Shown: positions 9,061 through 63,398 of the stretch, in pieces
How the letters are laid out: each line of letters starts with the position of its first letter
Numbering within the stretch: position 1 is the stretch's first letter
Source: Podarcis erhardii
Lineage: Eukaryota
DNA: 64,000 nt
Reading direction: 5' to 3' (one strand)
Assembly (NCBI GenBank): GCA_964252035.1
Contig: OZ176205.1
The notes under the pieces: model-generated
Seen by the model: the letters and a program-made list of their open reading frames with translations, nothing else
The model's database searches: none
Told to the model about the DNA's origin: nothing
Translations under genes and position numbers: made by a program

Positions 9061-11459
9061 TACGCACGTTTTTTCAAAAGAAAAAAATCTCTGTTTTTAG
9101 GACACTCCACCCACAGAGCTCCCAGTTAGGATGAATCGACGCCTTCATATGTGGAAAGCAAGTCAGGAAGGTTCGTTGGTTCCTCAGGGTGTTTTTCCAC
9201 AAACCCAAATCCACATAAAGATTGTATTAATTTCAAAAGATCCGAGTTCTTACGCTGTCTTTTCAAGAGACAGGAACCCGCCTTGTTCCTGATCATTGTA
9301 CAGTTCTTCCATTTGGCTTTTCCCTGCTTTTCCAGACATTGGAACTGCACAAATAGGGAAATAGTGATGCTCACTAGTTTTATCAGATCACACCAAAAAC
9401 GTTTGCTTTTATTGCTTGTATTGTGGCACTGTAAAAACGCCATATGCCAGGTTTATTTGGCATACACCTTTGTGGACTAGAGCCCACTTTGTCTGACACC
9501 TATGCCAAAATAAATCTGTAGGTAAAGTGCCAAAGGACTTGTTTTTCCTGCAAGAGGCTAGCCTGGCCACCTCTGTTGAATTTTTTAAAAACAAGAAGTT
9601 CTTTAAAACCATTTCCAGAAGAACAAAGGGCAGTATTTTACTTCAGCTCTCTCTTTGTCCTGATGATCTACTGAGACAGACACTTGAGGGAAGGACTCTA
9701 GACAATGGATGGATTTATGCAACTAATAGAAGACTGGATATGTACCATAAGCCGTACTCTGTGTCTACTAACCCTATGAAGAACCTCTGGTCCCTACTCG
9801 TTAATATCCATGAATTTGGAAAGTTGATGCCCTAAAGACGAAATTTTGAAATAAGCAACCATCGCTTTGTGGTTAAGCTGAGGTGTGTATATTTGAGACT
9901 GCCCGTTGCACATGCACAGTTGACAGCTTCAAGAATAGAAGTTGCGGGAAGCTGCAGGCATGGGAAAACCAAACGGGTACGGTCATACATAGAGTGAAGA
10001 CACCCCTGCCCCTTCTTGGATGTAAATGTGACTTGAAGGGGAGTGGGCAGAACAAATTTGCTGTGTTTTAAGCTGCTAATATGTACCGGTATATAGCCTC
10101 TCATGAAAATTCCATTTCTACTTTTAAATCCACTTACAGGATAATATTATAACTCAGATGAACAGTGACAGCAAATTGTACATAGCTGTGGAAGTCCCTG
10201 TTGTTGCCAACATAGCTATCCAGTGTTTTTTTCATTTTAATGGCATTTAATATCTTTTCCATTTTATTCAAAAATGCATAGCTATTAGCAAAATATAACC
10301 TTGCTTTATTTTATTTAGATTTCCAGCATTAATGATGTACAACATTTTGATAAATTTCATGCAAAAAACATGTACCTTAATGCGTTCCATAACACTGAGG
10401 ATGGACAGTTTGTTTAAAATGGATCACTGTAAAATATGATCTATCAACATTGTATCATTATCAAAATATTATTTTAAGACAGCTTAAGCATTATATTTAA
10501 AGTAACTGAGACCTTGAATATTTTCGGTGACCCGAATAACAAAGCTATAGCAATACTACATATGTATTTTAGCATTTGTACATATTGTTTAACATATTAT
10601 TATTAAATATGAAGGACAAAATGTGTTCTTGCCATTTATTACTCCTTTGGAATGCACAAAGGTGGCTTTGTATAACATCTCAGCCCTGCACTTGTTGGCT
10701 TGGGAATATTCAATGGGACTTATTTGCTAATAATTGTACTGTATTTAGAATTCTGCATTCAGAATTTTGTATGTTTCCCCAAACTAGTTTAGATCTGAAA
10801 TATGGCATTAGAAACTAGGAAACCAGTCTCCTTGCTCATGACAAAAATGGTATGCAAAGGCCAGATCCAGCCTCTACTTATGATAGCCTTCAGAGATTTT
10901 CCAGGGGGAAGTTGAGATATAAAATGCAAATGTATTTGCAAAAGAAAAAAACAAGCAAGCAAGAAAAAACAAACTTGTCCCACATTAAGTAATAAGACGC
11001 TCAGGCAGAGTCCCCCAAAACAAAATCTGCAAGGTGGTTTAGTATCTGGTGCCTGGACAACCAAAATCTAACCAGTCTGCGATCTGCTCATGACCAAACA
11101 TTGATTATACACTGAATGTCAGTGGTGTACAACATAACTTCATGTTGTGCATCAGTATGAGCCCATTTTAAATTGTTACATTCACCATCTGTGTATTATG
11201 GTTTCTATGTTGTATTCAGGTAGAGTAAATTAACAGCACTGTCTCTGAAAGTTGACCCTATAATTACCCACTTTCCTAGGATTGGGAGAAACCTGGATGC
11301 AGAGCTGTTTAGAGACTTCCCGGGGAGCTGTATTTAACCCGCTCTTAATGCCAATTACGTTACCAACCCTTGTGTGGAGCCTAACAGAACAATCAACATT
11401 TAGTTCTCACACATCACATTGTTTTAGGTTTAAGGTACGCAATCTGCACCTCTTATCTA

Positions 11460-42986: not shown

Positions 42987-43217
42987 CAGTGGTACCTTGG
43001 GTTAAGAACTGAATTTGTTCTGGAGGTCCGTTCTTAACCTGAAACTGTTCTTTACCTGAGGTACCACTTTAGCTAATGGGGCCTCCTGCTGCCACCGCGC
43101 GATTTCTGTTCTTATCCTGAAGCAAAGTTCTTAACCCGAGGTACTATTTCTGGGTTAGCGGAGTCTGTAACCTGAAGTGTCTGTAACCTGAAGTGTCTGT
43201 AACCTGAGGTACCACTG
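42987..43217. mobile_element. Tc1/mariner (Tigger-like) MITE
   Basis: TIRs cagtggtacc / ggtaccactg, TA flanks. Confidence 0.9.
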
Positions 43218-43550: not shown

Positions 43551-43570
43551 GAATATGTTCAGACATGTTT
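43551..43570. promoter_or_regulatory. Candidate far-upstream p53 response element
   Basis: GAATATGTTC AGACATGTTT, zero spacer, one mismatch (in core C). Confidence 0.35.
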
Positions 43571-47190: not shown

Positions 47191-49297
47191 TGGAGATTCA
47201 ATAGCTAGGCTAGTTGGCATCTATATGTGGAATTGGGGGGGGGGGGACACACACACACACACACGACATCTTGTCCTTTGGCCGGCCTTATTTGAGTGAC
47301 TGTCAGGCATAACTCTGAAGCTGGATAGAAAGAGGTATCTGGCTGGTCCCACTGTGAGAGCTTCTCCTTTCTTGAATTATTTGCCTGCCTTCAAATGCCT
47401 TGTGTTTCCATACATGCACACATAATTTTATTTGTATGCTATGCCAAGGCAGATTACAACCTGAAAAACCAAGCATAACATAACAGCAACATAACAAAAG
47501 GAGTCACAAACAATAAATAAAACATTTAAAAGTACTGAACTATTTCCACAATATTTAAGATATTTATATATTTAAAATAAAGAAACAATATTTAATATTT
47601 AAAATAATATTTAAAATAAAGAAACAAAGGGGAAGAAAAATTAAAAATAGCAACAACAAAAGACCCCAGCCAAAAAGACTTCAGCAACCTCAGCTTCTGC
47701 ATCTGGAGTCAGTCAGGGTCCTGTCCTTCAAGGCAGGGTGGAAAAAGGCTTGCAGGGCAGGGAGCAGGTCTTCACAGACAAGAGGAGTGAGGGCCTGCCT
47801 CTCAGTTTAAGAACCACAGCTCTAGAGATAAAGTCACCATGGAGCAGCTGGGAGTAAGAGGATATGTGAGCAGTGGGTAGATCTGGCTCAGATGGCCTAG
47901 TTTTTCAAAGCAGCACATCTCCCACATTCTAGTACACAATGTGTCCTAGGCATGTGATAATATTATTTTCTTAAAAATAAAAACAGGACAGCACCTGCTA
48001 TTGTTCTGCACGTAAGAGTTTTGACTTTGTTGGTAGCATTCAAATGGTGTGAAATAATAATAATAATAATAATACCAACAATATCCCTTGTTGCTAGCTT
48101 GTAGTAGCAAGAGTTTCTGGCATGAAATTAACACTTTCCCATGCCCTCTACTCTAATTTATTTTAAAGCGTAATTTCTCTGCTCTGTTTAGCAGAGGGAG
48201 AGGGCACTGACTGGGCACAATAAGGGAACTCTATTCCACAGGGCCCTGTGCCAAGGGGAGGTCCTACGGCAGCAGCACCAAAAAGGAGCCAGTCACGGGT
48301 TTGAGCAGTTATTAAATGCAAAGGATGCAGAGATTTAATTGGTCTTAAAGCCTCTTTCTTTGTACCCATGCAATCTATGCATGTTACGATGCTGGGTTTG
48401 GAATTTTAACTTGCCCATTAAAAACTGACTGAGTCAAATCAAAAACTTAAATGCAAGGGAGAAATAATGGGGACACTTCACAGGCATGAAATGTTCTAAG
48501 GAGAATAGTTCCTGCTAGGTTTTATTCCACAGCATGTAGTATCTATAGGCGGGGTTCAATCTCGCACTATGACGAACGTTTTGTCTGCATGAGCATTTCA
48601 ACTTGCCAGATGGAAAATCCCCCTCCCCTCCCCTCCACCCCCACATCCCACCCGCCACATCCTGTTCTCGGGATTCACCTAACACATCCATCCCCATTCA
48701 TGGGGAGGGGGGTTAGACATGAAGGGGGAAGAAAGGGGGGAAAGCATTGCTGTCCAAGTGGAAGTGCTTGCCCAGGACTTCCACTGATGGGTCTTGTTAG
48801 CTGCATCCTGCCGTAATTGTTCTAAGATGGTAATAGCCAACTTCAATCTGACCACAAGTCTCTCTTCATCTACACAGCCTGGACGTTAACAGAATTAGCA
48901 CCTGGCCAAACCCTTGTGCCTCAAGAAAAGCTGCACAGCAGGCAGAAATGCCACATCTTAATGGAATTGCAATGATAGAGGATACTGCATCTGTTGGATT
49001 TCTACCTGTCACCCAGCTGTTAAACACACAGGGGCTGTGCCGCCAACAAATGTGAGAATGGCAGTAGCCGTCCCATCCACCCACAAATAAGTGCACACAG
49101 GCTCAGGTATGGTAAATCGAACCCTTAATGTGCAGCCCTAATTTCAGCTGATGAGCACAAAGGTGCCACAATCAATGCAACTCCAGTCTAGCATCTTATC
49201 TGGATGCTGTGAACATAGCAGCATATTCTACTTTTCAAACAAGGACTGTTACTAACTCAGAAGAAGGCCACTTCATCAGGATGCAGCCTCCTTAGTA

Positions 49298-49317
49298 TAA
49301 CATGCCCAAACATGTTC
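49298..49317. promoter_or_regulatory. p53 response element, probable orthologue of the distal CDKN1A site
   Basis: TAACATGCCC AAACATGTTC: 19/20 to RRRCWWGYYY x2, both cores CATG, zero spacer. Confidence 0.8.
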
Positions 49318-50518
49318 CTCGTTAGAGCACTTCGCTCTGAAAGCTGCTTATCCAGGCACTTTTACTATGAAGGCTCACTTCTTATCCCTGGAAGCCAATT
49401 TTCAAAATCTGGCTACCAGCTGATTTAATTGATTTTCTTTGTATTCTGAAATAGAAGATAATGGGGTTCTTTAGCCATGAACCAATGTTGCCTTAGATAT
49501 GGAAAAAGCAGTCTAGATAATAGTTCTGCTGCTTACCTCATCCCAATCCACAGTGGAGAATAGAGTCCTGCGCAGTTAGAAATTCTGCCCCCACTCCAAT
49601 GCTGTCTTTAAAAAAATAATAACCCAGAGGCTGCTAGACAAAAAGTATTTAGTGTGACCTTGTGCCATACTTTGCAGAAGGCTGTCTTCTGTTTGAAGGC
49701 ATCCTCTGTTTGAAGGGCTGCCTGACCAAGTCTATTTTAAAGATAAAGAGCAGTTAATAAGGGTCAGCAACGATGATGTTTGTTAGCAGCTGGACAGCAG
49801 ACTGAGCAGTCACACAGGTCAACACTATGGTGAGATGCATTTCTATTTAAATTACAGTAATTCTTTCTAAAATTGCATCTCTTCATAGAAATTAGCATAT
49901 ACACTTTATGCAAACCTCTGTCCCCCCAACCCCTTTTTTTCCCTTTTTTGGCCACTCTGGAAATGATACAATTAACCGTGACTGGGTTTTCTCAGTGAGG
50001 TGAGGGCCTAGCTGCACGGCATGCAGATTTTCAATAAGTGTCTTTTCTACTAGTGCATAGTAGCAGCGAGGAAAGCTCTGCCTGGTAGATTTCAGCCTGT
50101 TACACAGCTTATAAAGGTGCAGAAGCCCAGCTCCAAAAGGTGGCAACCTACTAAGTAGACAGCTAAGACTTTTGAAGCAGGTGGCTAACAATGTTGCCTA
50201 GCAATGCCCTGCCATGTTAAATATTGATATATGGAGGGGGGGCAGATGCATGGTTCCCTTTGTTAAAGGTCCTGATTTGGCTCCAGACAGGTTGGTAGCA
50301 ACCTTAGAGTTGTAGCTCAACAGCCCTGAAGTGGAGCATCTTCACATGTCACTGAAAGTTCATATGACCAAGGTGTAATTTGTGAATGATTATCTCAATA
50401 CTTTATTATGAAGTTAAAAGAACAGTCCAGTAAGAATAATGAAATAAAATAAACAAAAAGAAGAGAACAAAACAGTACCTTACAAAAAGAATCAAGGGTC
50501 ACAGCCTTGTATCAAATA

Positions 50519-50760
50519 CAGTGGTACCTCGGGTTAAGAACTTAATTTGTTCCGGAGGTTCGTACTTAACCTGAAACTGTTCTTAATCTGAAGCACCACT
50601 TTAGCTAATGGGGCTTCCTGCTGCCGCCGCGCTGCCGGAGCACAATTTCTGTTCTCATCCTGAAGCAAAGTTCTTAACCTGAAGCACTATTTCTGGGTTA
50701 GCGGAGTCTGTAACCTGAAGCGTATGTAACCTGAAGTGTATGTAACCCGAGGTACCACTG
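50519..50760. mobile_element. Tc1/mariner (Tigger-like) MITE
   Basis: TIRs cagtggtacc / ggtaccactg, TA flanks. Confidence 0.9.
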
Positions 50761-51215: not shown

Positions 51216-51762
51216 AGGCAGCAGGAGGTGCGTTGATGTTGCCATGGTTTCCTTTGAGAAAAGGCAGGATATAAACCTAATAAGCAACTAAGCTAAGCTC
51301 CTGCAACAATTTGGTGATGCACAAAGAGAAAAGTGGGTGGATCTACAGTTGCCTTTCAGCCTTCATGTGACTTTGGGGACACCTAGGAATAGAGCTGTTC
51401 CACTTCCAGCTGAAGCTAATCTCAAGGCCTCTACCCAACATGAGCAGCTTGTGTGCATGACAGAAAGAGGGACCTCTGAAGCAACAGCGAATTATTTTAT
51501 TTTTATTTTTTGCTTTATTTTTTATTTAACAACAGGAAATTATAAAAGAACACCAAACTGTGGGGAATCCATCCCCCCCAGGAGAAATCTGGAATAAAGT
51601 GGGAAGGGGGCTACAGCTGGACTTTGGTGCCGATGATGCCATGCAGGGGAGAACCTGGAGATAGAATGAGGTGAACAGTGCCAGCTGGCTGCACCTGCTG
51701 CAGTGCTTCAGATTAAACAGTTTTTAATTCGCTGGGAGGAAGGAGGGAGGAAAGGTGTGTGA

Positions 51763-51861
51763 GTTGGTTGGTTGGTTGGTTGGTTGGCTGGCTGGTTAGT
51801 TGGTTGGTTGGTTGGCTGGTTAGTTGGTTGGTTGGCTGGTTAGTTGGTTGGTTGGTTGGCT
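51763..51861. repeat. Compound (GGTT)n/(GGCT) tetranucleotide repeat
   Basis: Direct reading. Confidence 0.95.
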
Positions 51862-52289
51862 GCCAGCCGGCCAGCCTAAGGAGTGCGGATGTTCTAAGTG
51901 CTCATATTTGCAGAAATTTTCAAGGCATGTCTAAAAATACTTTTGAGTGCTTTTCCACACAGGACACGGCAGTTAATACAGGGCAGGGAAAACGTACAAA
52001 GAGTCGCTGAAGAAACAAAGCGCAACCGAGCCGACACTCTTCCCGGTGTTTTGCATCAGCGTCAGAGGAGACACGGTCCGTTTACATCTTGCAGCATATT
52101 CCCCTGCGCTCCTCGAGTCGGGGCCGCGGCTCTTTGTGCTCGTAGACGTGGATGCCGGCGTACCTTTGCGGAAGAATTTGTCGGCGGCGCGATTCCTTTT
52201 CGGGCGTGTGTGCAAGCGAGGATCTAGGCAGTCAACAACGGAGACCAGGAAGGAGGCGCTCTGGAAATTCCTCGGAGGCGGGGAGGAGA

Positions 52290-52415
52290 GGCGCGAGGCC
52301 CCGCCCCTTCACGAGAGGGGGCGGAGTCTTGGAAAGGCTTTATGTAGTCCTGCCGGGAGCTGCTACGCTCAGAGCTACCGAGAGCAGAGGGCGCCTCCGA
52401 GCGAAGGAAGGCAGC

Positions 52416-52450
<35 letters not shown>
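52290..52450 (+). promoter_or_regulatory. CDKN1A: CDKN1A proximal promoter and non-coding exon 1 (TSS about 52365; donor GAG|GTGAGC at 52450/52451)
   Basis: Tandem GC boxes (gccccgcccc, gggggcggag), TATA-like tttatgtag about 52340, strong donor; layout resembles the mammalian p21 promoter; CpG island extends about 52020-55260. Confidence 0.65.
52416..52450. repeat. (AG)n microsatellite at the end of putative CDKN1A exon 1
   Basis: Direct reading. Confidence 0.9.
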
Positions 52451-53817: not shown

Positions 53818-53847
53818 GAGCCTGCCGGGGCATGTCCCGGCTTGCAG
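53818..53847. promoter_or_regulatory. Candidate intronic p53 response element (three abutting half-sites)
   Basis: GAGCCTGCCG GGGCATGTCC CGGCTTGCAG; central half-site perfect. Confidence 0.5.
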
Positions 53848-55919: not shown

Positions 55920-57305
55920 CATGAACCAATGTGCATAACATTCAATTTGACAACCCACTGCAAAAGTTGCTCTTTGAACCTTTTGTGGTGGTTTTGTTAG
56001 AGACGTGGTGGCACTTTCCTGTGATGCGAGTGAATTGTTTGCCTGCATGCAATCTAATGTGTTTAAGACTGGAAAGGGGACACTGTTCCCTCAGTAGAGG
56101 ATTAGTTAATAAACTATGTGAATTCATAGAATTGGCTAAAATGACAGCAGCCATTAGACTTCACTCAAATCAAAAACTTAAGAAGGAATGGAATTGCTTA
56201 TATGACAAAACATCGCTCCAAAACGAATTTATTGATATGCATGGACTAACTTTGTAAAGGTGTGAAAAAATTATTGCAAGAGGGTTTTGAGAGCCAAAGG
56301 AACCAATATATATAACACAATCACTAGTTCAATATATATCAAAGGAAGTCGAGCTGTGGTGGAGGGAAGTCACAATAGAATGAGATAGACACAGAATGGA
56401 AAACGGGAATTTTATCAATTTAGTATCTTATACTGTATATTCTGTATACTTTAGCGCATATATTCCATGTTATAATCATTAAATGAAATAAAGATTTAAA
56501 ACTCAATGTGTTTAAGGCTGCTGCAGTTATTGTGGTCACAGAAATAGCCTTGACTCTTCTCTCTCAGCAAGAGGAAGAAGCAGTTCAGAACTTGCATGGC
56601 ACCACCTTTTGCAGGGTGAGCAGCTGAGGGAACTAAAGGTGCCTTGTGGGCACTCTGCTTCTGTGGCCTGAAGTGGCAACTTAACAAGATATCAAGTTGA
56701 GGCCTGCCCTCGGCAGCCACGCTACCTGCCAGGACTTGTTCTGGTATGCCTAAACCTCTCAATGATGTCATTCAGCATAGCTGTTTATAAAGAGAGCATG
56801 AAGGCTGCTGCTATTTTTAACCTCTTTGCCTCTTCCCAAGCCTGAACACTGGAGGAAAGGCAGCCTTGCAAACACATTGGCCAGTGTAGGTGGTGGTGGT
56901 GGTCTGGAAATATACTCTCTAGACAAAACACAGTCCACTTAAGCATCCTGGTAACCCAAACCTTATAAACCCAAATGTGTGTATGCGCAGTAAACCTTAG
57001 AGGTGACTTCACGCAAGACTCTTAAATTGATCTACAGTGTGATGTCAAGATGGGTCATTATTTGGCTGCATTCTGTCTCTCACTAATGCCATTCAGCACT
57101 AGAGAAAATGTGTAATGATGGCGTGGGAGGGCCTTGTATTGATGGAAACTCTGTCTCCCTTGATGGCCTTGAGATCAGCTTTGTCTGCAATATGGATGGA
57201 TGAAAGGGGGGCAGGGCAAAGGTCAAAATGCTAAGATTATGTGGGCCAAAGGCATCAGATTTGATGAAGCCAGGAACCCCAACTCAACTGTACAGATCTC
57301 TCTCT

Positions 57306-59499: not shown

Positions 59500-59866
59500 G
59501 TACATAATAAGACATATACTTGATTAGGCCTTGCTGCTGGTCTTGCCGCCATTAGGAGGTGTGGTTGGTCAGTGACTTGGGACAGGGTCTCTTCTGTATT
59601 GGAACCAAGCTACAACATTTCCTCCCCTCGAGGCTCGTCTTGCTTCCACCTTGAAGGCCTTTCATTGTGATGTCAATGCTGATATTTTTGCCAAGCTTTT
59701 GACCTAGTAAAATTAGCTTTGCCATGGCACTTAAATTTTTTATTTTTATCAATTTATTTTACTTGCTGAATTGATTTATAAGTTTTATTGTTAATTTATA
59801 GCAGTTATAAGTTGCCTGTTGTAACTTTCCTTAAAACTTTCGCTTGTATTTCTCCTAGCTGGAAAC

Positions 59867-60254
59867 ATGCCTCTGTCTAAGGGCAACCTCCTTCGGTCTC
59901 CCTGCAGCAGGAAGCTTTGCAGAAACCTCTTTGGACCAGTTGATCATGACCAGCTTCAAAAGGACTTCCAGTCCTTGATGAAGGCCCAGCTGGAGGAGGC
60001 TCAGCAGAAGTGGAACTTTGACTTTGAATCGGAAACTCCACTTGAAGGGGACTATAAATGGGAAAAGGTCTCGCATCTAAACAGGTTGCCTTCTCAAGAT
60101 CTGCTGAGCCCCACAAAGGAGAACAGTTGTGCCGGTGAAAAGAGCTTGAGCTCCTCCCCAGTGCTTCTCAAGATGCACACAAAGACAGACAGGCCAACGC
60201 AAGTGGGCTTTGAGGCTCGCAAGTCTTCCAAGCGAAAGCAGACAACTATCAAAG
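59867..60254 (+). CDS. CDKN1A: CDKN1A (p21) main coding exon; exon starts at 59859
   Basis: CDI domain CRNLFGPVDHDQL...KWNFDFESETPLEGDYKWEKV; acceptor ttctcctag; donor G|GTAAGG. Confidence 0.95.
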
Positions 60255-61249: not shown

Positions 61250-61299
61250 ACTTCTACAGCTCCAAGCGGAGAACTGTCCCCTGCAAGTCAGACCCATGA
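61250..61299 (+). CDS. CDKN1A: CDKN1A last coding exon (DFYSSKRRTVPCKSDP*)
   Basis: Completes PIP box QTTIKDFY; 388+50 = 438 nt = 145 aa plus stop. Confidence 0.95.
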
Positions 61300-63398
61300 C
61301 AACTACACTGCAAGCAAAATGCATCCACACAGTCTCTGGGCTAAAGGAGCTGACCTGCCTTCACCGCTATTAGCTGGAATGGCCGACTTGGACACGACAC
61401 TCAGTGCAGGCAGCAGACTTGACTGTTTGAAGGAGCAGCTAGTTAGAGTAATGACTTCTGCTCTGAGGCTCTTACTTTACATAAAAACTATGTAGCGGAC
61501 TAGTGTAACACTTCAGAAGGATGTAGAGTTATTTTCCTTATTTATGATGGCACTGGAGCTTTATGTGCAATGGAATATATTGTAAAGCCTTATCCTAAAA
61601 TAGACTTAAGTTGCTGGGGGAGATGCTTAAGCATGATGGCAAGAGGGAAGGATCAGTGCAAGTACTGCTTGTGGCTGAGACCTTTCACACACCTGTCTCA
61701 GGTATGAGTCACTTTGCAGGTGCAAGGTCTGAAGGATTGTATTTTCCTAGGTCTGTGATCTTGCGCTCTCTCTCTCTCTGTTGTTTTTTGTCCTGCTAGG
61801 TTTAAAGGAATATGGTGAGGGGGGGGGAGAAAAAAGACTTCCAATCCAGAAAGCTAATCCATTCATTTTACAAAGATGAAGATCTTCCTACTGTGGGCAG
61901 TAGTATCACAAATCAGTACCATTACTGTTGCAGGAAGGATTCCATTATCAGACAATACTGGATAGTGTGTGAGCATTGTGACTTCCTTCCCCTTCCTAAA
62001 ACTATTGAATAATACTGTAATTCAAGTCATGCAAATAACACTAGCCTTAGGGGGGGAAATGTAGCCAGTGGGAACCAGAAGTTTGAGCTCGGAAATATTA
62101 CTCTACTTCTGCCATGTAGCCTGTAGGCACATATTGCCAGCATAGGGACTCATCCATCCTTCGACAGCATACAGCCTTTGGTATGGTACTAATTGGTGAG
62201 AATATTGTGGGATTTGGGTTCCCAGTGAGTGCTAGCGAGGCTTGATAAGACATGCCCATGGAGTTTCCATTGCCTCTGGAAACATGGTTCACTTGTGACA
62301 TCTCTCTCTAGCATGAAATAATGATAAAGGATTTACCTTGTGTTTGCTTTCCATGCTTTCTGCAGCTACCTGTGATCTTGCCAGCTTTCCTTTACCCTTT
62401 TAAAATTGGAAAGTAAATTGCTTAAAGCTTAAGCACATCTACTTGGTGCAAGAAAATTAAACTCACTGCTGTTCCTGTCTGAATTTGGGACTGATATTTC
62501 GGTCTTATTGGCATCTTATTGTCAAAAGCACCACCTGTTAATATTGGGTGCAGTGTTTAACACTGGAATCTGAAATGTAGCCTTTTGCCATGTGCAAGTC
62601 AAATCAGACTTTCATGTGAATCATCACTATGTTCCAAGTCAAATCTAACTTTGCCTTTATTGTTCTACCCCTTTGCAACGGGTTCTTTACTGCTGTGCTG
62701 CTGGAATAGCACCCGCTGCTGAAATCTTGAATCTTTCATCGCGGTGTGCTTTTTGGGAGCTATTGCTTTATTTCAGAGGCTGGAGCTGGGTTGGAACACT
62801 TGGACCTCCTGAGGATCGCATTTTAGTTAAACGAAGGGTGTGTCCCATTTAACTGCATCTGCTTTGCAAGAGCGGTGGGGAAATCCCTACAACCGTGGGA
62901 AAGGATTAATGCTAGCACATTACTGACGAGCACAATTTTGCCTTTGACAGACAACGCAGGAGCATATTCGTGCTTTGTTCGGCACCTTCATCTTTTTTCC
63001 TCCAAGAAAAAGTTGGGTGGGGGGAGATGTCAAGCACTTGGCCTAGTGGGTGGGTTGTTGTTATAGGCCTGGGATGGAGGGGGGGGGAATGTAGCAGCTG
63101 AAATTGGGAGTACTGTCAGCCATACTGTATTAGACTAGTTACAAACAACAACTGTGGCTTGTGAGCAAGATGTTGGAAGAAGACCTATCTTACCCAGAAG
63201 CACAGCTTCAGGCACTTCCTTAAGATAGTATGTTTGCCTGTGGATTTCTGACCTTTCTAGAGTTGCCATGGACAGGCCTGGCCACTTCGGACCACTGCAC
63301 TTCTACATTCAGGGTAATGCATAATGCTAGGACTCTCGGCACTAATCCATTTGTTTGTGAATATAATGCTGCTGAACTGACTTAAGTATAGACCTTAA

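What the first reader, a model, noticed from the sequence alone, without database searches (positions are those of the whole stretch)
49298..49317. Near-perfect p53 response element about 3.05 kb upstream of the inferred p21 TSS
Seen: TAACATGCCC AAACATGTTC, 19/20, two CATG cores, in unique sequence. Established: the human distal p21 element GAACATGTCCCAACATGTTG lies a little over 2 kb upstream. Inference: the p53-p21 switch is conserved in sequence and position in squamates, relevant to regeneration and senescence work.
Basis: partly seen in the sequence, partly recalled or inferred. Interest (0 to 1): 0.7.

Follow-up and report, generated by a model that had tools for sequence, protein, structure and literature searches.

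The report
Conserved p53 site upstream of lizard p21
A near-perfect p53 binding motif really does sit about 3 kb upstream of the lizard p21 (CDKN1A) promoter. It is the best-conserved 20 bases of its neighbourhood across lizards, a gecko and a turtle, so it is very probably the reptile version of the well-known p53-to-p21 switch: an expected but previously undescribed case.

Summary
The 20-mer at 49298-49317 matches the p53 consensus at 19 of 20 positions, has no spacer and has two CATG cores. The window holds 2 such sites against 0.2 expected by chance.

The gene downstream is CDKN1A, shown by its CDI domain, its C-terminal PCNA-binding box and close matches to annotated squamate p21 proteins.

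I fetched the p21 locus from 11 other sauropsid genomes:
- **Two other lacertids:** the site is identical.
- **A cordylid and a gecko:** it differs only by purine-to-purine changes that keep the consensus.
- **A turtle:** it is present with one core change.
- **A garter snake:** it is half decayed.
- **Turkey:** it was not found.

In a 320-bp alignment the motif is the conservation peak (0.84 against a median of 0.38). It is single copy and not part of a repeat.

Two further p53-type motifs are also conserved, one in intron 1 and one at an alternative TATA promoter in intron 1.

Verdict: a real, conserved p53-family response element and a new member of a known kind, of moderate interest.

The parts
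49298..49317 (.). Site A: full p53-family response element, 19/20 to consensus, no spacer, two CATG cores
   Evidence: Orthologues. Conservation peak.
49219..49541 (.). Conserved non-coding block around site A; the core that aligns with turtle is 49276-49362
   Evidence: BLAST hits; alignment A1.
52263..52347 (+). Canonical CDKN1A core promoter: GGAAATTCC (52263), GC boxes (52297-52326), TATA-like CTTTATGTAG (52338-52347)
   Evidence: Alignment A5. The same motif order occurs in Rhineura, Tiliqua, Hemicordylus, Sceloporus (a true TATATATAG), Thamnophis and Paroedura.
52370..52450 (+). Non-coding exon 1a. The start is inferred from the TATA box; the splice donor G|GT lies at 52450/52451.
   Evidence: The junction is reproduced in the annotated Lacerta agilis protein P0002 (...SERER|AGNMPLSK).
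59859..60254 (+). CDKN1A exon 2 (ATG at 59867), CDI domain
   Evidence: Pfam CDI, E = 2e-24. Sequence. 100% identical to a Podarcis p21.
61250..61299 (+). Coding part of CDKN1A exon 3. It completes the PCNA-binding box QTTIK|DFY, whose first five residues lie at the end of exon 2, and carries the stop codon.
53818..53837 (.). Site B: p53-type motif in intron 1, about 1.45 kb downstream of the transcription start (2 mismatches here)
   Evidence: Alignment A2. The second half-site GGRCATGYCC is kept in all 10 squamate sequences. The full site has 0 mismatches in Sceloporus and 1 in Paroedura.
56732..56751 (.). Site C: p53-type motif (perfect first half-site) about 50 bp upstream of the TATA box of an intron-1 alternative promoter
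   Evidence: Alignment A3. The turtle orthologue has 1 mismatch.
56600..56870 (+). Conserved element acting as alternative promoter P2: TGATGTCAT (56763), TATA box (56784), CTATTTTTAA (56811)
   Evidence: The coding sequence of Sceloporus isoform X1 begins about 140 bp after the orthologous TATA box.
43551..43570 (.). Second motif with 1 mismatch, about 8.8 kb upstream of the transcription start
   Evidence: Identical in Lacerta agilis. Not covered by the other loci.

Best explanation
Site A is a functional response element of the p53 family that serves as a distal enhancer of CDKN1A. After DNA damage or other stress, a stabilised p53 tetramer would bind the two abutting decamers, one dimer per half-site. 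It would recruit co-activators and raise transcription from the TATA/GC-box promoter 3 kb downstream, and possibly from the intron-1 promoter. The resulting p21 blocks cyclin-CDK complexes and PCNA and arrests the cell cycle. What is shown: the motif, the identity of the gene, the promoter position, and purifying selection on exactly these 20 bases for at least the age of Squamata and probably since the split from turtles. What is inferred: that p53 is the factor that binds, and that binding activates p21.
For: The motif matches 19/20 with two CATG cores and no spacer. The gene is p21. A promoter conserved across squamates gives the -3.05 kb distance. Orthologous sites lie in collinear blocks: identical in two lacertids; A-to-G changes at purine positions only in Hemicordylus and Paroedura; present in Trachemys. 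The motif window is the conservation maximum, 0.84 pairwise identity against a median of 0.38. It is single copy, so not repeat-derived. The 19.5 kb around the gene hold 6 motifs with at most 2 mismatches against 1.07 expected; 0 of 300 simulations reach 6. Positions 3, 13 and 18 are A/T, as in the high-affinity human p21 type (PMC7817693). The CDKN1A response elements are known to be unusually conserved in mammals (PMC1934401).
Against: The Thamnophis orthologue has lost the first half-site (4 mismatches there). The turtle copy has CATA in its second core. Turkey shows neither the block nor any site within 10 kb upstream, although a 100-N gap lies there. The region chosen for the enrichment test was picked after seeing the data. 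Four of the loci did not reach far enough upstream to be informative.
Confidence: 0.72

Rival explanations
1. The conserved element is read mainly by p63 or p73, which recognise almost the same motif. It would then control p21 in epithelial or developmental settings rather than in the p53 damage response.
For: The three family members share the binding consensus (PMC7498329). AACATG-type cores with A/T-rich flanks suit p63 as well. This last point is from established knowledge, not tested here.
Against: Nothing in the sequence separates the paralogues. In mammals the equivalent p21 site is a prime p53 target.
Confidence: 0.13
2. The block is conserved because it is the promoter or first exon of an upstream alternative p21 transcript or a divergent non-coding RNA. 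The p53-like motif would be one part of that promoter rather than a distal enhancer of the main promoter.
For: The locus uses several first exons: annotated isoforms start at different places. The conserved flanks extend about 100-250 bp beyond the motif.
Against: No TATA box, CpG island or annotated exon was seen at 49.2-49.6 kb. GC content there is about 0.43. This reading would still make it a p53-responsive element.
Confidence: 0.08
3. It is a chance match without function, and its apparent conservation is an effect of aligning on the most similar words.
For: Consensus-like 20-mers do arise by chance (0.2 per 64 kb). p53 sites turn over quickly between species (PMC7498329). The site is decayed in a snake and absent in turkey.
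Against: BLAST found the blocks independently. They lie in the same order between an upstream conserved block and the promoter in every species. All substitutions among the lizards keep the consensus. The motif is the conservation peak.
Confidence: 0.05

Closest known systems
Human CDKN1A 5' (distal) p53 response element at about -2.3 kb
   Same: It is a full site without spacer and with two CATG cores. 16 of 20 bases are identical to the lizard site, and also to the turtle site. It lies on the same side of the gene, a few kb upstream of a TATA plus GC-box promoter. Positions 3, 13 and 18 are A/T-rich.
   Different: Position 8 is C rather than T, and positions 1, 11 and 20 differ. The distance is 2.6-5.2 kb in squamates. 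Homology of the flanks to the mammalian site was not tested, so orthology is open. No binding data exist for any reptile.
Human CDKN1A 3' (proximal) p53 response element at about -1.4 kb
   Same: Like site B, it combines one perfect GGGCATGTCT-type half-site with a poor partner half-site (alignment A2).
   Different: Site B lies downstream of the transcription start, in intron 1. The shared half-site alone cannot show orthology. A check of the longer shared context in the literature only hit an artificial sequence.
Conserved cell-cycle class of p53 response elements (Horvath et al. 2007, PMC1934401)
   Same: It shows high interspecific conservation, with substitutions that stay within the consensus.
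   Different: That study covered mammals only. Here the depth is squamates plus a turtle.

Membership tests
Canonical p53 response element | Two decamers RRRCWWGYYY with few mismatches | tested here: met
   19/20 match; the only mismatch is at the weakly constrained position 1.
Canonical p53 response element | Spacer of 0-13 bp; 0 bp in strong activating sites | tested here: met
   The half-sites abut.
Canonical p53 response element | Association with a p53 target gene, within a few kb of its transcription start | tested here: met
   About 3.05 kb upstream of the conserved CDKN1A promoter.
Canonical p53 response element | Occupancy by p53 and p53-dependent transactivation | not testable with these tools
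Orthologue of the mammalian CDKN1A 5' site | Homology of flanking sequence, or placement in a whole-genome alignment | not tested
Only the published 20-mer was compared (16/20 identical).
Orthologue of the mammalian CDKN1A 5' site | Same relative position and orientation to the gene | tested here: inconclusive
   It is upstream of the TATA promoter in both, at -2.3 kb in human and -2.6 to -5.2 kb in squamates. This is compatible but not decisive.
CDKN1A (p21, Cip/Kip family) | N-terminal CDI domain plus a C-terminal PCNA-interacting box | tested here: met
   Pfam CDI, E = 2e-24. QTTIKDFY spans the exon 2/3 junction. The best hits are annotated squamate p21 proteins.

The most novel reading that the evidence does not exclude
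Site A is the direct orthologue of the human -2.3 kb p21 element. That would make it one of the oldest p53 response elements known, dating to the amniote ancestor more than 300 million years ago, in a factor whose sites otherwise turn over fast. It would also be one part of an ancient three-part p53 architecture at CDKN1A: the distal site, the intron-1 site B, and site C at a TATA-driven alternative promoter. Snakes and birds would have partly dismantled this architecture.
Probability: 0.35. Interest if true: 0.55.

Novelty: new member of a known kind. Interest (0 to 1): 0.36.

Why it matters
p21 is the main effector of p53-driven arrest and senescence. A review reports that fewer than 13% of p53 binding sites are shared even between mouse and human (PMC7498329). 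A p21 site held nearly unchanged across squamates and into turtles therefore shows that this one edge of the network is under long-term constraint outside mammals. It also gives people working on lizard tail regeneration, reptile ageing or cancer resistance three concrete sequences (A, B, C) and two promoters to mutate or assay. The apparent decay in a snake and the absence in turkey are testable leads on lineage-specific rewiring. No paper in the searched library combines 'p53 response element', 'reptile' and 'p21'.

Tried and rejected
- **Transcript evidence.** The transcription start rests on promoter conservation and annotated protein models only.
- **Zootoca.** Isoform X2 was not on record.
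- **Loci that fell short.** The Rhineura, Anolis, Tiliqua and Sceloporus loci end before the expected position of site A. They say nothing about it.
- **Turkey.** There is no alignable block and no site with at most 3 mismatches and intact cores in 10 kb upstream. A 100-N gap lies at 9582-9681 of that locus and was left as it is.
- **Human 3' site context.** I suspected that site B shares a longer context with the human 3' site. The literature hit for that string was an artificial crystallography sequence, so I dropped the idea.
- **Repeat origin.** Rejected: site A is single copy apart from a local inverted duplicate in the gecko.
- **Lacerta N-terminus.** The annotated 193-aa Lacerta protein starts upstream of the conserved TATA box. 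I treat that N-terminus as a doubtful model and use only its splice junction.
- **Search restrictions.** No human contig was fetched; human 20-mers come from papers.

Full report
**The observation.** The window reads TAACATGCCC AAACATGTTC at 49298-49317. It matches the p53 consensus, two copies of RRRCWWGYYY, at 19 of 20 positions. There is no spacer and both cores are CATG. Allowing one mismatch, the 64-kb window holds two such sites against 0.20 expected from dinucleotide-preserving shuffles. The other site is at 43551.

**The gene.** An open frame at 59867-60254 carries a CDI domain (Pfam E = 2e-24). It is spliced to a short last coding exon at 61250-61299. Together they spell the PCNA-binding box QTTIK|DFY that marks p21 among the Cip/Kip proteins. 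Exon 2, searched by reference, is 100% identical to an annotated Podarcis cyclin-dependent kinase inhibitor 1 and 70-90% identical to those of other squamates. The Podarcis locus I fetched is only 92-96% identical in DNA. The window therefore comes from a lacertid close to, but not the same as, that assembly. Notes from earlier in this scan place STK38, PTH4 and SRSF3 upstream, which is the mammalian gene order. I did not re-test that.

**The transcription start.**
- A block at 52263-52347 is kept in order in Rhineura, Tiliqua, Hemicordylus, Sceloporus, Thamnophis and Paroedura. It contains GGAAATTCC, GC boxes and a TATA-like CTTTATGTAG. Sceloporus has a textbook TATATATAG at that spot.
- This places the start near 52.37 kb.
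- Exon 1a ends at 52450 (G|GTGAGC). The annotated Lacerta agilis protein reads straight across this junction into exon 2.
- About 240 bp of that distance is a dispersed repeat at 50523-50760, absent from the two other lacertids.

**Conservation of site A.** I fetched the p21 locus of eleven other sauropsid genomes. Isoforms that start in upstream exons were used where possible, so that the 10-kb flank reached far enough.

| Species | State of site A |
|---|---|
| Second Podarcis, Lacerta agilis | identical |
| Hemicordylus (cordylid) | one A-to-G change at a purine position |
| Paroedura (gecko) | two A-to-G changes at purine positions; a second, inverted copy of the block 0.9 kb away |
| Trachemys (turtle) | position 1 is G, so the first half-site is perfect; the second core reads CATA |
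| Thamnophis (garter snake) | flanks and second half-site kept; first half-site has four mismatches |
| Turkey | neither the block nor any comparable motif within 10 kb upstream |

The Rhineura, Anolis, Tiliqua and Sceloporus loci stop short of the expected position and are uninformative.

In every informative species the order is the same: an upstream conserved block (48092-48283 in the window), site A, the TATA promoter, site B, site C, exon 2. The distance from site A to the promoter motif is 2.6-3.0 kb in lacertids, 3.8 kb in the snake, 4.2 kb in the cordylid and 4.3-5.2 kb in the gecko.

In a 320-bp alignment of five lineages, the 20-bp window on the motif has the highest mean pairwise identity, 0.84 against a median of 0.38.

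**Other p53-type motifs at the locus.** Only seven motifs with at most two mismatches occur in the whole window. Six of them lie between 43.5 and 62.3 kb. For that 19.5-kb stretch, simulation expects 1.07, and none of 300 runs reaches six. The caveat is that I chose the boundaries after seeing the hits.
- **Site B (53818, intron 1, about +1.45 kb).** It keeps a GGRCATGYCC half-site in all ten squamate sequences. It is a perfect full site in Sceloporus and has one mismatch in Paroedura. Its spacing from the promoter is stable at 1.3-1.75 kb.
- **Site C (56732).** It lies inside a strongly conserved element that has a TGATGTCAT motif, a TATA box and a CTATTTTTAA motif. The coding sequence of Sceloporus isoform X1 begins just downstream of the orthologous TATA box, so this element is an alternative promoter. 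The turtle version of site C has one mismatch.

**Most likely mechanism.** Site A is a p53-family response element working as a distal enhancer of p21, as in mammals. The motif, the gene, the promoter and the selective constraint are shown. Binding by p53 and activation of p21 are inferred. The bases at positions 3, 13 and 18 are A/T, which in human sites goes with high-affinity, arrest-type binding. Position 8 is C, and the gecko also has G at position 13, a combination that lowered affinity about fourfold when engineered into the human p21 site (PMC7817693).

**Rivals.**
- The element may be read mainly by p63 or p73.
- It may be a promoter for an upstream alternative transcript.
- It may be a chance match, which the conservation pattern makes unlikely.

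**Comparison with what is known.** The human 5' site (PMC1888811; -2.3 kb, PMC6539464) shares 16 of 20 bases and the same general position. Two consensus-matching sites are expected to share most bases anyway, and I could not compare flanks with any mammal. Orthology is therefore plausible but unproven. CDKN1A sites are known to be unusually conserved among mammals (PMC1934401), while p53 sites in general turn over fast (PMC7498329). No paper in the searched library combines 'p53 response element', 'reptile' and 'p21'.

**Verdict.** This is a new member of a known kind and of moderate interest. The added value is the depth of conservation, the two further conserved motifs, the alternative promoter, and the possible losses in a snake and a bird.

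No human contig was fetched or compared. The N runs were left untouched.

Noticed in passing
window 53818-53837: Site B is a p53-type motif in the CpG island of intron 1. Its second half-site is kept in all ten squamate sequences, and its distance from the promoter is stable (1.3-1.75 kb). A similar GGGCATGTCT half-site sits at the edge of the turtle CpG island (L010 6034).
   Followed up: partly
window 56600-56870: A strongly conserved intron-1 element (74-86% identity in non-lacertid squamates, partly alignable in turtle) looks like an alternative TATA promoter. It has an ATF/CRE-like TGATGTCAT, a MEF2-like CTATTTTTAA and a p53-type half-site cluster about 50 bp upstream of the TATA box. Sceloporus isoform X1 starts just after it.
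   Followed up: partly
window 48092-48283: A second upstream conserved block lies 1.1 kb before site A. It aligns in Hemicordylus, Thamnophis (80%), Paroedura and Trachemys. It contains a forkhead-like TGTTTAGC and an ACAACAAGGGA motif but no p53 motif.
   Followed up: partly
window 43551-43570: A second p53-type motif with one mismatch (the first core reads TATG) lies about 8.8 kb upstream of the transcription start. It is identical in Lacerta agilis and is not covered by the more distant loci.
   Followed up: partly
window 51923-51942 and 62238-62257: Two more motifs with 2 mismatches. One has a perfect AGGCATGTCT half-site about 0.45 kb upstream of the transcription start and is kept in lacertids and Rhineura. 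The other lies about 0.9 kb past the stop codon and is kept in lacertids only.
   Followed up: partly
L009 3942-3961 and 4838-4857: The gecko Paroedura carries the site A block twice, the second copy inverted about 0.9 kb downstream. This is a local inverted duplication of the enhancer.
   Followed up: partly
window 50523-50760 and 42993-43194: Two copies of a dispersed repeat of about 200 bp. The copy at 50.5 kb is absent from the other two lacertid genomes, so it is a recent insertion between site A and the promoter.
   Followed up: partly
window 52414-52450 and 51760-51860: A GA microsatellite forms the 3' end of exon 1a and is longer here than in Lacerta. A TGGT-type tandem repeat lies about 0.5 kb upstream of the promoter.
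   Followed up: no
L002 10001 (Lacerta agilis): The annotated 193-aa p21 protein starts at an ATG that lies upstream of the conserved TATA box and reads through the GC boxes. This N-terminal extension is probably an annotation artefact.
   Followed up: partly
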